Below, one piece after another: positions 35,644 to 42,106 of a stretch of 64,000 nucleotides of DNA. The stretch covers positions 79,057 to 143,056 of the forward strand of contig JAWQFM010000009.1 of assembly GCA_033442325.1 (NCBI GenBank), given 5' to 3'. The notes below the pieces were generated by a model. It did no database searches, had not been told where the DNA came from, and saw only the letters and a program-made list of their open reading frames with translations. A program made the translations under genes and the position numbers. Position 1 is the first letter of the stretch; each line of letters opens with the position of its first letter. This DNA comes from Salpingoeca rosetta. Taxonomy: Eukaryota > Protista > Choanoflagellata.

Positions 35644-38600
35644 ATGGGCAACACATGCGCCACGGGTCGCCGACGATACCAAGTCATTTCAGGTGCATGT
35701 GTGTGTGTGTGTGTGAGTTGGCGCTTCACGTGCACTCAAAGTGTGTTTTGTTGCGCTGCTTATCAACAACACTTTATTCAACAACACTTCATTCATCTCT
35801 TGCACCCCCCCCCTCTCAAACCGCCTTCATCCTCACGCGTTGTCAGGCGACGAAGTGGCACAGGAGACAACCTTTGACGCCACAACCGACACAACACAGC
35901 AGGCCGCTGCCTCCCTGTCTGCACAGCAAGCGCTCGTGCGCACACACAGCGAACATGCGGATGAACTCGACACAGAACCGCAGACACAGGCTGAGCAAAC
36001 ATACACGCTGGTGCGTACACTGTGTGTGTGTGTATCTGCATGTATGTGCTTGCGTGGTGAGCTTGTGCTTGTGTCCGTGCCTGTGCTTTCGCTTGTGCGC
36101 TTTTGTTTCGTGTTGATAATAATCACGTGGATACGCACGTCACGGGTGCAACGCTGACCTTCCCATTCACATTCCCTCCTTGCTCACTCGCTGTCACTGC
36201 ACCATGCCCACCCTGCCGTCCGGTTGCATTCTGTGTTCAGGCTGTGGCGAACCTGAAGCTGGAGCGAAGTGACTCGCTTGAGAACCTGCTCACGTGCGCC
36301 ATCTGCCTCGACTTTCTGTTCGAGCCCGTTCGCTCTACGTGTGGCCACTCGTTCTGCCGCACGTGCCTCCGCCGCCTCCTTGAATTCGACGGTCAGTCGT
36401 GGCGGTGGTGGTGATTGTTGTGATTGTTGTGATGGCTGCGGTCGACAGTACCATGCAGAGCTGCGCGTTTTTTTGTTTTTGTTTTGTTGTCCAACCTCAT
36501 TGCGTCACCATGCCAGCCTGTTTACACCCACGTTCACATCATCATCACCACCACCACTCACCACAACCACTCCAACTCCCACTCACCACACCTCTGCTGT
36601 AGGCTCTCGGGCCAACTGTCCCAAGTGCCGGCAGTCGTTTGCGCGCATGGACCCGGACAAGCTCGAGATTGACCGCCCGCTCGCGGAGACGGTGCAGCGC
36701 AACTTTGAGATGGAGGAGATGGCGAAACGCAAGGCGGAGGCCGAAGTTGACGAACAGGAGTACGTGCAGGCGCGGGCAGCGCGGCAGCGGCGGGAGCAGC
36801 TGATGGAGAGCAACCCGCTGCAGCTCATGTTCGAGTCGGAGGAGGACCCCACACGCCGACGCATTCTCAGGGTACGCGACATCCGCCCGCCACCCACGCA
36901 GCCGCTGGGGCACCGGGTGCATGCGTTTTGACGAGGTGGATGTGTGAATGCGTGTGTTTATGTGCGAATGTGCGAGATGAGTGCGTGTGTTTATGTGCGA
37001 ATGTGCGAGACGAATGCGTGTGTATGTGTAACTGTCAACATGTGTGTATATGTTTTGTGTGTGTGTGTGTGTGTGTGTGTGTGTGTGTGTGTGTGTGTGT
37101 GTGTGTGTGTGTGTGTGTGTGTGTGTGTGTGTGGCGCCCATTGAACCCGCTCTCAACTGCACTTACAATCACTATCATATCCACCACCACGACCACCACC
37201 ACGACCACCACGCAGCGCGACATGGCATTGCTGACGGGCCTGGGCTTCTCCGAGGTGATGGCGCAGAAGGCGCTGTTTGTTGCCTCGGGCACACACACGG
37301 AGGCGCTGGCGTGGCTCATGCACCACCAACACCACCCAGATGTCGACGTCCCCTGGAACTCGACACAGCTCCAGGTCAGCTGCGGCAGCCGACACAATCG
37401 TGGCACTCGTGCTGGTGGTGGTGGTGTTGGTGGGGTGTCTCGGTGCGAGGTGGTGTTGTGTTGCATGTTCGTTTTATGTCCTGTGATGTTATGTCATGTG
37501 CGCTGGCACTCCGTCTCCCTGTCAGCCTCACGCGTGTCACTTGCTTGATATTGCTGCTGTTGTTGTCCGTGACACGACAGGAGCAAATTGCACTGCGCAA
37601 CACACGCCGCGTCCTGTGTGGGATTGACACTGAGCCAAGTGAGTGTCAAACTGCGGATGCGGGTTGTGTGTGTGTGTTGCGGTCTGGCGAACCGTGTTAC
37701 CGTCCAATCACGAACGACGCGACGCACTCGCGCACACACACGAAACGGCATCCGCACTGCCTGACAATTCCTCTCTCACGCCATCACCCATGAACCCCCC
37801 CCCCTCTTCTTTGTTCTTTCCTCGCGCCTCCCCCCCCCCTAACACACACACACACACACACACACACACACACACACACACACACACACACACACACACA
37901 CACACACACACACACACACACACACACAGCAACGCAAGTGCTTCTTGCTGGGCAGCTGAACGTGTCTGTGGGTGTTGTGCGGCACGTGAGCATCCTGGGA
38001 CGCAAGGCGTGGCTCGTCTCCACGCGCGGGTTTGGCGCGCTCGCCATGCCCGAGATTGTCTTCATCGTCAAGGCCGAGAGCGAGGTGCGCGGTGCTGAAT
38101 GTGGCTGCAGTCGTTGTTGGCTGCATTGTGGATGGTAACTGTTACATTTCTCGGTTGCGCTCGTGTACAAGCACACACACATATATACTCACGCGCATAC
38201 ACGCACGCACACACACACACACACGCACACACACACACACACAAACACACACAAACACACACAAACACACACAAACACCCGCTACATTTGCAGGAGCTGG
38301 CAGTGCCGCAGTGCATCCTGAAGCTGTTGAAGAAGCTGTTTCGCCGGGCGAAGCGGGGCGCATTCACCGCCGACCACGCCACCATCATCCGAGTGCGTGT
38401 TCGGGGAAGGGAAAAAACAGCGAAGTGGGCGACTCAAGCACGTGCACACACACACACACACACACACACACACACACTACACGCGTGCATTGGTACTCAC
38501 CTCACAACCTGCGCGCCCTTTTTTGTGTTTCCTGTGCCCAGTTCTCGCACGACGCCACGCCGTTCCTGAACAACCCTGAGCTGACGGGCGTGATGCTGAC

Positions 38601-41600: not shown

Positions 41601-42106
41601 CATACTCCCACCCTCTGTTCACGCCTCTCCCCCCTGCATGTTCATCACTGCCGATGTCTTTCCAGAGCCGCCGTCGTCTGGGGATGCATCGCTCATCACA
41701 CTCCACATTGACCTCGAACCCGCCGGCACAGACGCTTCTGCTGCCGTGAGTTGCGGCGGCCCGCGACATGTGCAGTTGTGTGTGTGTGTGTGTGTGTGTG
41801 TGTGTGTGTGTGTGTGTGTGTGTGTGTGTGTGTGCGTGTGCGTGCGTGTGCGTGTCGTATGTCATGTGCATACATTTTGAAGAAAGCGCTTGCTCCAGCG
41901 CTGTTTCGCTACCCTACTCGTACTCACGCCTTCGCCCACCTGTGTGTGCTTGCATCCAGACGTATCGCATCTCCAAGAACTACGGGGACGTGTGTCCACA
42001 GGCGCCAGGTCTGACAATGCGGAAATGGAGCCGGATGCTCCATCCACTCCCCGCCCCGCCCGTCACCGCCAAAGTCGCACTTCAGGTGTCACTCGAACTC
42101 ATCTGA
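35644..42106 (+). CDS. RING-HC + UBA + SARA/endofin (ZFYVE9/16) C-terminal-like domain protein, putative E3 ubiquitin ligase
   Basis: MGNTC N-terminus; C3HC4 RING CAICLDFLFEPVRSTCGHSFCRTC../..CPKCR; UBA LLTGLGFSEVMAQKALFVASGTHTEALAWLMHH; SARA_C-like KAWLVSTRGFGALAMPEIVFIV and QSLQGLPVPHGNFVLALLLFGHEVDWAEHLPCRFLL/QLGRNHRGNYPFP. TGA at 42104-42106. Confidence 0.8.
41102..41225. repeat. (CAA)n microsatellite, about 41 units, intronic
   Basis: Directly visible, ending 9 nt before the end of the intron at 41234. Confidence 0.95.

What the first reader, a model, noticed from the sequence alone, without database searches (positions are those of the whole stretch)
35644..42106. Novel architecture: acylated RING-UBA ligase fused to a SARA/endofin C-terminal domain, with no FYVE
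Seen: N-terminal MGNTC (Gly2 myristoylation plus Cys palmitoylation candidate), C3HC4 RING, coiled segment, UBA, then a long domain with KAWLVSTRGFGALAMPEIVFIV..QSLQGLPVPHGNFVLALLLFGHEVDWAEHLPCRFLLQLGRNHRGNYPFP. Known: SARA/ZFYVE9 has [70 protein letters not shown] (SARA_C/DUF3480 region). In animals this domain follows a FYVE domain and serves TGF-beta/Smad and ESCRT-linked endosomal sorting, with ubiquitin enzymes recruited in trans. Choanoflagellates lack the TGF-beta/Smad pathway. Inference: a pre-metazoan membrane-anchored ubiquitin write/read module in which SARA_C is the substrate adaptor, pointing to an ancestral ubiquitin-sorting role for this domain.
Basis: partly seen in the sequence, partly recalled or inferred. 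Interest (0 to 1): 0.8.

Follow-up and report, generated by a model that had tools for sequence, protein, structure and literature searches.

The report
Choanoflagellate RING-UBA ligase with SARA domain
A real, expressed Salpingoeca rosetta gene (PTSG_01060) encodes a probably lipid-anchored RING ubiquitin ligase with a UBA domain fused to the SUFU-like C-terminal domain known from the animal endosomal proteins SARA and endofin; several choanoflagellates share this architecture, and I found no paper describing it.

Summary
RNA reads and spliced contigs from four studies define one + strand transcript. My 19-exon model (35644-42106) translates to 799 aa, identical to NCBI hypothetical protein PTSG_01060 of Salpingoeca rosetta.

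On the spliced protein, Pfam gives:
- RING: E 6.8e-10
- UBA_7: E 1e-7
- SARA_C: 35.8 bits, cut-off 25

A profile of the C-terminal half matches the crystallised C-terminal region of human ZFYVE9/SARA (PDB 4BKW) at E 1.5e-56. An AlphaFold model matches it at Z 29.2 over ZFYVE9 residues 932-1421.

There is no FYVE domain:
- No FYVE signature occurs anywhere in the 64 kb window.
- The upstream neighbour is a divergent minus-strand transporter gene.
- A relative's transcript has a stop three codons before its MGN start.

Six full-length proteins share the architecture, three of them from named choanoflagellates (Microstomoeca, Barroeca, Hartaetosiga). MGN and all eight RING zinc ligands are invariant.

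Added here: SARA_C has a SUFU-like two-lobe fold plus a third domain. The best shape match among ESM Atlas clusters is a Myxococcota cluster carrying SARA_C, so the domain may not be animal-specific.

Lipidation, ligase activity, the substrate-adaptor role and an "ancestral ubiquitin-sorting role" are inferences, not shown. The animal pairing of SARA with the dually acylated RING ligase RNF11 is a suggestive parallel. I class it as a new variant of a known kind, of moderate interest.

The parts
35644..42106 (+). Coding region of PTSG_01060, from ATG to stop. 19 exons: 35644-35692, 35847-36010, 36241-36391, 36603-36871, 37216-37374, 37581-37638, 37930-38084, 38294-38392, 38542-38723, 38935-39046, 39258-39441, 39744-39826, 40015-40048, 40324-40429, 40606-40666, 40857-40949, 41235-41448, 41666-41745, 41960-42106.
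   Evidence: RNA joints and spliced contigs of runs X21, X4, X6 and X13 cover exons 2-16. All 18 introns are GT..AG. The translation is identical to P0009, NCBI PTSG_01060, 799 aa. The last three exons were not covered by laid reads. They rest on frame, GT..AG, identity to the annotated protein and the orthologue alignment.
35644..35661 (+). N-terminal MGNTCA: candidate N-myristoylation site at Gly2 and S-palmitoylation site at Cys5.
   Evidence: M1, G2 and N3 are invariant in 6 of 6 proteins and Cys5 is present in 5 of 6. A PROSITE PS00008-type pattern at Gly2 is met in S. rosetta and in 4 of 6 overall. No in-frame ATG lies between the upstream stop (35398-35400) and 35644. Lipidation itself was not tested.
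35692..36252 (+). Acidic, Ser/Thr/Gln-rich linker, probably disordered (aa 17-75, exons 1-3).
   Evidence: In the 60 residues aa 17-76 counted, there are 11 D+E against 1 K+R and 22 S+T+Q. pLDDT is below 50 for aa 1-97 in the full-length model. The region is poorly conserved and expanded in P0006 and P0012.
36295..36631 (+). C3HC4 RING finger (aa 90-131), split by intron 36392-36602.
   Evidence: Pfam zf-C3HC4 E 6.8e-10 and zf-C3HC4_2 E 3.7e-9. The eight zinc ligands C90, C93, C105, H107, C110, C113, C127 and C130, plus I92, P128 and R131, are invariant in six proteins. The closest solved RINGs are TRIM21 (E 4.2e-10), TRIM5, TRIM25 and BRCA1.
36641..36871 (+).
   Evidence: 19 D+E and 15 K+R in 76 residues. 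AlphaFold predicts one long helix at 146-191 with pLDDT about 50-70. Coiled-coil pairing was not tested.
37231..37347 (+). UBA domain (aa 217-255) with the LGF loop.
   Evidence: Pfam UBA_7 E 1e-7, 32.2 bits against a cut-off of 27. Three short helices are predicted at 204-247. G221, F222, K229, A230, L231, F232 and V233 are invariant.
37351..37610 (+). Strongly conserved linker PWNxTQLQ|EQxALRNTRR (aa 257-274) across intron 37375-37580, joining UBA to the SARA-type region.
   Evidence: P257, W258, N259, T261, L263, Q264, E265, Q266, R270, R273 and R274 are invariant. Joint 37374|37581 is seen in 13 raw RNA reads and in contigs of three further runs. The same intron position occurs in an unidentified relative (L001).
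37620..42103 (+). C-terminal region (aa 278-799) homologous to the whole crystallised C-terminal region of human ZFYVE9/SARA.
   Evidence: Family profile A4 against 4bkw_A: E 1.5e-56, profile positions 42-373 against chain 55-379. The model of aa 256-799 against 4bkw: Foldseek E 7.3e-24; VIA-align Z 29.2, 379 residues, model 23-544 against ZFYVE9 932-1421.
38635..39010 (+). The part that Pfam itself recognises as SARA_C (aa 400-454, profile positions 1-54 of 353). It contains the most conserved motif of the family.
   Evidence: Pfam PF11979: E 5.8e-9, 35.8 bits against a cut-off of 25. Single exons alone gave only 12.6 bits. In the more SARA-like relative P0006 the match is 92.4 bits over profile positions 1-226.
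37617..39263 (+). First lobe (aa 277-468), with the fold of the SUFU N-terminal domain.
   Evidence: VIA-align against human SUFU 4blb_A: Z 13.9, rmsd 3.1, 179 residues, model 22-213. Bacterial SUFU homologue 3k5j: Z 13.5.
39264..40883 (+). Second lobe (aa 469-631), which corresponds to the SUFU C-terminal domain when whole SUFU is aligned.
   Evidence: Full-length SUFU chains align over model 22-376 (4kmd_A Z 13.7, 275 residues). Foldseek E values are 8.5e-11 to 7.8e-7 for human and Drosophila SUFU.
41313..42103 (+). Third, C-terminal alpha/beta domain (aa 680-799), shared with ZFYVE9 but not with SUFU. It ends with the conserved YRISKN...PQAP...W..LH motif.
   Evidence: It lies inside the 4bkw alignment (model range up to 544). 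Apart from 4bkw, the region has only weak matches, the best at Z 5.4. Y753, R754, I755, K757, P764, Q765, A766, P767, W774 and H779 are invariant.
41102..41226 (+). Pure CAA repeat inside intron 16 (40950-41234). It is not coding.
   Evidence: The repeat made read laying refuse the first stretch. There is no AG between the 41054-41055 AG (the acceptor for an exon starting at 41056) and 41233-41234. The 41235 acceptor keeps the frame and matches the orthologues and PTSG_01060.

Best explanation
The locus is one expressed 19-exon gene, PTSG_01060 of Salpingoeca rosetta, encoding a 799-aa multidomain RING ubiquitin ligase.

Shown here:
- The transcript structure.
- The domain order: MGN-x-C N-terminus, acidic disordered linker, C3HC4 RING, long charged helix, UBA, conserved linker, then a 520-aa region.
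- That 520-aa region is homologous over its whole length to the crystallised C-terminal region of human SARA/ZFYVE9.
- The region has a SUFU-like two-lobe fold plus a third alpha/beta domain.
- There is no FYVE domain and no Smad-binding domain.
- Five other full-length proteins share the architecture, three of them from named choanoflagellates.

Inferred:
1. Gly2 is myristoylated and Cys5 palmitoylated. This would tether the protein to a membrane and replace the PI3P-binding FYVE domain of SARA and endofin.
2. The RING recruits a charged E2.
3. The SARA_C module binds a partner protein, probably through a short peptide held between the two lobes as SUFU holds GLI. This brings the partner, or cargo attached to it, within reach of the RING.
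4. The UBA binds the ubiquitin product or ubiquitinated cargo.

The most likely setting is ubiquitin-dependent sorting at endocytic membranes.
For: Transcript:
- GT..AG joints in raw stranded RNA reads.
- Single spliced contigs from three other studies run from 35843 through 39440 and on.
- The model is identical to P0009, PTSG_01060.

Domains:
- Pfam RING 6.8e-10, UBA_7 1e-7, SARA_C 5.8e-9.
- 4bkw_A: E 1.5e-56 with the family profile and 8.2e-15 with the single sequence.
- Fold: 4bkw Z 29.2; SUFU Z 13.9.

Likely activity:
- All eight zinc ligands, I92, P128 and R131 are invariant. From general knowledge of RING-E2 contacts, the last three sit at positions that touch the E2 and ubiquitin.

N-terminus:
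- MGN is invariant and the myristoylation pattern is met.
- An upstream in-frame stop lies 3 codons before MGN in transcript L002.

No FYVE.

Animal parallels:
- The acylated RING ligase RNF11 binds SARA and ESCRT-0 (PMC7697665).
- Endofin's C-terminus binds TOM1, and endofin is needed to sort ubiquitinated cargo (PMC8567383).
Against: - No experiment or computation here tests lipidation, ligase activity, ubiquitin binding, localisation or any partner.
- Two of six proteins (Microstomoeca, Barroeca) have Val or Met followed by Pro at the positions where the PROSITE myristoylation pattern requires a small residue and forbids Pro.
- The UBA and N-terminus are modelled with low confidence.
- The peptide-clamp idea is carried over from SUFU on fold alone. 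No Pfam SUFU hit was seen and the GLI-binding residues were not compared.
- RNF11 is a RING-H2 protein without a UBA, so the parallel is an analogy, not orthology.
Confidence: 0.6

Rival explanations
1. The SARA_C module does not recruit targets. It is an intramolecular regulator, a clamp that holds the conserved linker, the UBA or the RING and keeps the ligase off until a signal releases it.
For: The linker PWNxTQLQEQxALRNTRR directly before the module is among the most conserved stretches of the protein. It is predicted as a helix leading into the first lobe. From general knowledge, SUFU-type clamps open and close around a bound peptide.
Against: The linker has low confidence in the models (pLDDT 34-37; below 50 for aa 236-275), so no docking is shown. 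In animals the same module binds other proteins, such as TOM1 for endofin (PMC8567383).
Confidence: 0.13
2. The RING is not an active ligase. The protein is a membrane-bound ubiquitin-binding adaptor (UBA plus SARA_C), working like endofin or SARA as a scaffold.
For: SARA and endofin themselves are scaffolds. Activity was not tested.
Against: All zinc ligands and the usual E2-contact positions are invariant over proteins as little as 34% identical. That argues for selection on a working RING.
Confidence: 0.1
3. The module works as bacterial SUFU-family immunity proteins do. It binds a toxin or effector from bacterial prey, and the RING marks that protein for destruction, as a defence in a bacterivore.
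For: Fold matches include bacterial SUFU and Imm33 immunity-protein clusters, and a Myxococcota cluster that carries SARA_C. Bacterial SUFU homologue 3k5j gives Z 13.5.
Against: The closest relative by far is the animal endosomal SARA domain (Z 29.2 against about 13.5). There is no sign of the rapid diversification expected of a defence gene: the family aligns end to end. Only one copy was seen per species in my limited searches.
Confidence: 0.06
4. Gene-model artefact: the RING-UBA part and the SARA_C part are two genes or two transcripts.
For: The tool warns that contigs can bridge neighbouring genes. Joint 37638|37930 was not in the listed raw-read joints.
Against: Three contigs from three studies bridge 37371 to 37938 with exactly the 69 nt predicted by exon 6 plus 8 nt of exon 7. 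The frame is continuous. Complete transcripts or ORFs from other species have the same order.
Confidence: 0.02
5. It is an ordinary SARA/endofin orthologue whose FYVE exons are hidden upstream, for example in the N gap at 34625-34724.
For: A 100-N gap lies 0.9 kb upstream. Reads were laid only from 35600, so the 5' end of the transcript was not seen directly.
Against: No R[RK]HHCR signature occurs in any frame of the 64 kb window. An in-frame stop lies at 35398-35400 with no ATG before 35644. The next gene upstream is a minus-strand nucleotide-sugar transporter, so the gap sits in a divergent intergenic region. Five of six proteins start at MGN (the Barroeca model carries a 36-aa extension before it), and L002 has a stop 3 codons upstream.
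Confidence: 0.02

Closest known systems
SARA (ZFYVE9) and endofin (ZFYVE16), animal endosomal FYVE proteins
   Same: The whole C-terminal region is homologous: Pfam SARA_C is above its cut-off, the profile gives E 1.5e-56 against 4bkw_A, and the structure gives Z 29.2 over ZFYVE9 932-1421. The likely setting is membrane-associated and linked to ubiquitin-dependent sorting.
   Different: There is no FYVE domain, no Smad-binding domain (no PF11409 hit) and no long N-terminal region. Instead there is an acylation-type N-terminus, a RING and a UBA. [quoted passage not shown] It is a paralogous architecture, not an orthologue.
Suppressor of fused (SUFU) and bacterial SUFU-family proteins
   Same: The first two lobes of the C-terminal region have the SUFU fold: Z 13.9, rmsd 3.1, 179 residues for the first lobe, about 280 residues for both lobes, and Foldseek E down to 8.5e-11.
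   Different: No sequence-level SUFU match was seen. A third C-terminal domain is present. SUFU is not fused to ubiquitin-system domains. Conservation of the GLI-binding cleft was not examined.
RNF11, the animal endosomal RING-H2 ligase
   Same: RNF11 is myristoylated on Gly2 and palmitoylated on Cys4, and this double acylation is needed for membrane and endosome localisation. It binds SARA and ESCRT-0 proteins (PMC7697665). The choanoflagellate protein joins in one chain what RNF11 and SARA do as a pair.
   Different: RNF11 is 154 aa with a RING-H2 and a PPxY motif, and has no UBA and no SARA_C. The RING here is C3HC4 and closest to the TRIM and BRCA1 types. This is an analogy only.
RING ligases with a UBA domain (Cbl and IAP families; from general knowledge)
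   Same: They combine a catalytic RING with a ubiquitin-binding UBA in one chain.
   Different: The target-binding modules differ: TKB in Cbl and BIR in IAPs, against SARA_C here. The domain order differs, and none of them has an acylated N-terminus together with a SUFU-like domain.
Stand-alone SARA_C proteins of Myxococcota (an ESM Atlas cluster)
   Same: This is the best shape match among ESM Atlas clusters: TM 0.57 both ways over 371 residues, and 73% of its 98 members carry PF11979.
   Different: These are bacterial proteins of about 544 aa with no RING or UBA. I could not fetch the sequences, so the relationship (vertical descent, transfer or contamination) is untested.

Membership tests
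SARA_C domain family (Pfam PF11979, formerly DUF3480) | Score above Pfam's gathering cut-off on the spliced protein | tested here: met
   35.8 bits against a cut-off of 25, E 5.8e-9, but only profile positions 1-54 of 353. The relative P0006 scores 92.4 bits over positions 1-226.
SARA_C domain family (Pfam PF11979, formerly DUF3480) | Homology beyond the N-terminal motif, over the whole crystallised SARA C-terminal region | tested here: met
   The family profile against 4bkw_A gives E 1.5e-56 over about 330 positions. The model against 4bkw gives Z 29.2, 379 residues, ZFYVE9 932-1421 and Foldseek E 7.3e-24.
SARA/endofin (ZFYVE9/ZFYVE16) orthologues | FYVE zinc finger (PI3P binding) N-terminal to SARA_C | tested here: not met
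   There is no FYVE hit on P0009 and no R[RK]HHCR signature in six frames of the window. The N-terminus is fixed at MGN. The upstream neighbour is another gene on the other strand.
SARA/endofin (ZFYVE9/ZFYVE16) orthologues | Smad-binding domain (Pfam PF11409 SARA) | tested here: not met
   No PF11409 hit at E up to 0.01 on P0009 or P0010, nor at E up to 0.1 on P0002 or P0006.
RING-type E3 ubiquitin ligases | Cross-brace C3HC4 pattern with all eight zinc ligands, and a Pfam RING score above cut-off | tested here: met
   The pattern C-x2-C-x11-C-x-H-x2-C-x2-C-x13-C-x2-C at aa 90-130 is found in all six proteins and its ligands are invariant. zf-C3HC4 scores 39.1 bits against a cut-off of 21.
RING-type E3 ubiquitin ligases | E2-dependent ubiquitin transfer | not testable with these tools
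   Only indirect evidence: I92, P128 and R131 are invariant. From general knowledge, these sit at E2-contact and linchpin positions.
UBA domain | Pfam score above cut-off and a three-helix bundle with the hydrophobic loop motif | tested here: met
   UBA_7 scores 32.2 bits against a cut-off of 27. Three helices are predicted at 204-247, but at low pLDDT. The LGF loop is invariant. Ubiquitin binding itself is not testable here.
N-myristoylated, S-palmitoylated proteins | Gly2 after the initiator Met in a context that N-myristoyltransferase accepts, with a nearby Cys | tested here: inconclusive
   Gly2 and Asn3 are invariant and Cys5 is present in 5 of 6. The PS00008-type pattern is met in 4 of 6, including S. 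rosetta, and fails in Microstomoeca and Barroeca. The modification itself is not testable here.
SUFU superfamily | SUFU-like fold of the N-terminal lobe, and of both lobes together | tested here: met
   Z 13.9, rmsd 3.1, 179 residues for the first lobe, and Z 13.7 over 275 residues for both lobes. Foldseek E is 8.5e-11. These stand well above the next unrelated rows (Z 5.4).
SUFU superfamily | Sequence-level match to Pfam SUFU (PF05076) or SUFU_C | tested here: not met
   No such hit at E up to 0.01. The relation is seen in structure only.

The most novel reading that the evidence does not exclude
The choanoflagellate protein is a 'Rosetta stone' for an animal pair. It joins in one chain what animals do with two proteins, an acylated RING ligase (RNF11) and SARA/endofin. 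If so, the original holozoan job of the SARA_C/SUFU-like module was to hand partners to a ubiquitin ligase at endocytic membranes. SARA's role in TGF-beta/Smad signalling would then be a later co-option, made by swapping the RING-UBA head for FYVE plus a Smad-binding domain.
Probability: 0.22. Interest if true: 0.7.

Novelty: new variant of a known kind. Interest (0 to 1): 0.55.

Why it matters
The C-terminal domain of SARA and endofin has a solved structure (4BKW), yet I found almost nothing written about it. Full-text searches for DUF3480, PF11979, 4BKW and PTSG_01060 returned no relevant paper.

Three points give a concrete, testable idea of what the domain does:
- In the closest living relatives of animals, which lack the TGF-beta/Smad pathway, it is welded to a RING and a UBA.
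- It has the fold of SUFU, a peptide clamp.
- In animals SARA and endofin work with the ubiquitin-sorting proteins RNF11, TOM1 and ESCRT-0.

Together these suggest that the domain presents partners to the ubiquitin system at membranes.

S. rosetta can be grown, and to my knowledge transfected and gene-edited, so the idea can be tested directly. The finding also bears on how animal signalling scaffolds were assembled from older modules. The limits are that all parts are known domains, the gene is already annotated, and nothing functional is shown.

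Tried and rejected
- Pfam on single exons gave only 12.6 bits (E 0.068) for SARA_C. That was insufficient, and the spliced protein was needed.
- My first splice guess for exon 1 (donor at 35683) was wrong. The acceptor AG lies at 35845-35846 and the donor at 35693, because the TCAG is shared by both sides.
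- I considered the CAA repeat (41102-41226) as a coding poly-Gln tract and rejected it. There is no usable acceptor before it except 41056, which runs into a stop after four codons. The 41235 acceptor matches the orthologues and PTSG_01060.
I then laid 35600-41095, as the tool suggested. Exons 17-19 and the 5' end upstream of 35600 therefore have no read evidence from me.
- The exhaustive representative search with one 60-aa exon did not return the S. rosetta protein itself. It did return the Microstomoeca orthologue, which led to PTSG_01060. Two of its eight hits (P0007, P0008) were spurious LRR and low-complexity proteins.
- The word-indexed search with P0006 aa 500-989 found only the query. 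The alignment search found family members but no ZFYVE9/16, so I made no alignment or tree with animal SARA_C sequences.
- The ESM Atlas feature searches gave nothing. The Atlas's own low-confidence model (pLDDT 0.42) gave meaningless glycosidase matches.
- Weak profile hits to purine/uridine phosphorylases (E 0.06-0.9) come from one family at a chance level. I rejected them.
- Earlier notes of this scan held nothing on SARA, endofin or SUFU.

Full report
**What is there**

The region is intron-rich eukaryotic DNA. Thirteen of the 18 introns carry GT/CA dinucleotide runs of 8 bases or more, the longest being 86.

I laid public RNA data on 35600-41095.
- A stranded raw-read RNA run (X21) covers the exons almost only in the orientation expected for a + strand RNA.
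- It gives GT..AG joints at 36010|36241, 36391|36603, 36871|37216, 37374|37581, 38392|38542, 38723|38935, 39826|40015, 40048|40324, 40429|40606 and 40666|40857.
- Single spliced contigs from three other studies (X13 from 2011, X4 from 2023, X6 from 2024) run through 35843...39440 and further.
- The contig coordinates leave exactly 69 nt between 37371 and 37938. That equals exon 37581-37638 plus the first 8 nt of exon 37930-38084. The RING-UBA exons and the SARA-like exons are therefore on one transcript.

**Gene model**

After resolving the remaining junctions by GT..AG, frame and an orthologue, the 19-exon model (35644-42106) gives 799 aa. It is letter for letter P0009, NCBI 'hypothetical protein PTSG_01060 [Salpingoeca rosetta]', which UniRef names a RING-type domain-containing protein.

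It missed exon 35847-36010 and several small exons, and it set some exon ends a few codons off.

The last three exons and the 5' end upstream of 35600 have no read evidence from me. They rest on identity with the annotated protein and on the alignment with orthologues.

**Domains**

On the spliced protein Pfam finds:

| Domain | Residues | E-value | Bits (cut-off) |
|---|---|---|---|
| zf-C3HC4 | 90-130 | 6.8e-10 | 39.1 (21) |
| UBA_7 | 217-255 | 1e-7 | 32.2 (27) |
| SARA_C | 400-454 | 5.8e-9 | 35.8 (25) |

The SARA_C match covers only the first 54 of 353 profile positions. On single exons it was only 12.6 bits. I therefore tested the rest of the C-terminal half separately.
- A profile of aa 256-799 and its relatives (A4) hits PDB 4bkw_A, the crystal structure of the C-terminal region of human ZFYVE9 (SARA). 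E is 1.5e-56 over about 330 positions.
- The S. rosetta protein alone gives E 8.2e-15.
- An AlphaFold model of aa 256-799 (pLDDT 69, pTM 0.58) has 4BKW as its best match: Foldseek E 7.3e-24, and VIA-align Z 29.2 with 379 residues, model 23-544 against ZFYVE9 932-1421.

The whole 520-aa C-terminal half thus corresponds to the whole crystallised SARA region.

**A deeper reading of the domain**

The next matches are all Suppressor of fused:
- Human and Drosophila SUFU: Foldseek E 8.5e-11 to 7.8e-7.
- First lobe: Z 13.9, rmsd 3.1 over 179 residues.
- Both lobes: Z about 13.7 over about 280 residues.
- A bacterial SUFU homologue (3k5j): Z 13.5.

Unrelated rows start at Z 5.4. SARA_C is therefore a SUFU-like two-lobe module followed by a third alpha/beta domain (aa 680-799). 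I found no paper stating this.

A shape search of ESM Atlas cluster representatives put a 98-member bacterial cluster first (Myxococcota, 544 aa, 73% with Pfam SARA_C, TM 0.57). Chordate FYVE-SARA_C clusters and bacterial SUFU/Imm33 immunity-protein clusters ranked below it. I could not fetch those sequences, so this remains a lead. It warns against treating SARA_C as a holozoan invention.

**No FYVE**

- No Pfam FYVE or Smad-binding-domain hit on the protein or its relatives.
- No R[RK]HHCR signature in any of six frames of the 64 kb window.
- An in-frame stop lies at 35398-35400 with no ATG before 35644, and the Kozak context is good.
- The next gene upstream is a minus-strand nucleotide-sugar transporter (Pfam E about 1e-12). 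The 100-N gap at 34625-34724 therefore lies in a divergent intergenic region.
- Five of the six full-length proteins begin at MGN; the Barroeca model carries 36 extra residues before it. The transcript contig L002 has a stop three codons before its MGN.

**Conservation**

The same architecture occurs in:
- Microstomoeca roanoka (P0002, 798 aa)
- Barroeca monosierra (P0010)
- Hartaetosiga balthica (P0011)
- an unnamed EukProt transcriptome (P0006, 989 aa, SARA_C 92 bits)
- a Logan transcript (P0012, 883 aa)

Fragments also turn up in other assemblies. Identity to S. rosetta falls to 34%, yet the proteins align end to end.

Invariant features are M1-G2-N3, the eight RING ligands, I92, P128, R131, the UBA core, the linker PWNxTQLQEQ...R..RR and many positions of the C-terminal region. 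Cys5 is present in 5 of 6. A PROSITE-type myristoylation pattern at Gly2 is met in 4 of 6, including S. rosetta. In an unidentified relative the intron after the UBA exon sits at the same codon (L001).

The full-length model (pLDDT 64) predicts:
- a disordered N-terminal 97 residues
- a folded RING
- one long helix at 146-191
- three short UBA helices at low confidence
- a linker helix
- the well-modelled C-terminal domains

**How it most likely works**

Shown: the gene, the transcript, the domain homologies and the conservation.

Inferred:
- Lipid anchoring through Gly2 and Cys5.
- E2 recruitment by the RING.
- Ubiquitin binding by the UBA.
- Partner binding by the SUFU-like module.

SUFU holds a short GLI peptide between its lobes (entries 4BLB and 4KMD are such complexes). 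That is my model for how the module could hold a target, but I did not compare cleft residues.

The animal literature fits a ubiquitin-sorting setting:
- RNF11 is a RING ligase myristoylated on Gly2 and palmitoylated on Cys4. It sits on endosomes and binds SARA and ESCRT-0 proteins (PMC7697665).
- Endofin's C-terminus binds TOM1, an adaptor for ubiquitinated receptors. Endofin is needed for lysosomal sorting of ubiquitinated cargo (PMC8567383).

The choanoflagellate protein looks like a one-chain version of such a pair, with acylation in place of FYVE as the membrane tether.

Rivals:
- The module as an internal regulator.
- An inactive RING, making the protein a pure adaptor.
- A defence role against bacterial toxins, by analogy with SUFU-family immunity proteins.
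- The two artefact readings, which the data contradict.

**Comparison and novelty**

It is not a SARA/endofin orthologue, because two defining features, FYVE and the Smad-binding domain, were tested and not met. It is a member of the SARA_C domain family and of the RING E3 class.

[quoted passage not shown] Here the SARA-type domain therefore exists without the pathway.

The gene is already annotated and the databases list its Pfam domains automatically. Full-text searches found no description of this architecture or of the domain's fold.

I rate it a new variant of a known kind, with interest 0.55. It is a solid, conserved and experimentally tractable clue to the function of a poorly understood domain, but it is built from known parts and no function is shown.

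I also could not retrieve animal SARA_C sequences for a tree.

Noticed in passing
window 41102-41226: A pure (CAA)n repeat of about 125 nt lies inside intron 16. Translated, it reads as poly-Gln, poly-Asn or poly-Thr depending on frame, but it is spliced out. It also blocks read laying.
   Followed up: partly
window 35693-41959 (introns of the gene): 13 of 18 introns hold GT/CA dinucleotide runs of 8 to 86 bases, and intron lengths cluster around 150-340 nt. This is a striking genome-wide style rather than a feature of this gene.
   Followed up: no
window 37181-37212 and 36537-36557: RNA reads pile up here on both strands, with many loose ends, 'goes back' joints, non-GT..AG joints and a C>G difference at 37188. 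Contig depth in X4 jumps to about 4500. This is probably cross-mapping from other transcripts that carry ACC/ACG-type repeats, not a feature of this gene.
   Followed up: no
window 42940-43521 (and probably to about 44512), minus strand: The downstream neighbour, convergent with the gene, has an exon matching the NSF AAA+ ATPase lid domain (Pfam E 1.6e-7). It is probably the NSF vesicle-fusion ATPase.
   Followed up: partly
window 31755-32872, minus strand: The upstream neighbour is a nucleotide-sugar transporter (Pfam Nuc_sug_transp, E about 1e-12 on two exons). It is transcribed away from the gene. The shared upstream region of about 2 kb contains the assembly gap 34625-34724.
   Followed up: partly
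ESM Atlas cluster, row 1: A 98-member cluster of 544-aa hypothetical proteins, labelled Myxococcota, carries Pfam SARA_C in 73% of members. It is the best shape match to the model (TM 0.57). This suggests bacterial stand-alone SARA_C proteins, or contamination.
   Followed up: no
L001:79-1039: A genomic contig from an unidentified organism (Logan SRR8389943) has a UBA exon ending ...ELQ and a next exon starting EQMVLRNTRR. This is the same intron position as 37374|37581 here. Its SARA_C part is more animal-like (PPYLFGIL...EIEWAK).
   Followed up: partly
P0010 (Barroeca monosierra), aa 1-36: The gene model has 36 extra residues before the conserved MGN, unlike all other members. The start is probably mis-called.
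   Followed up: no
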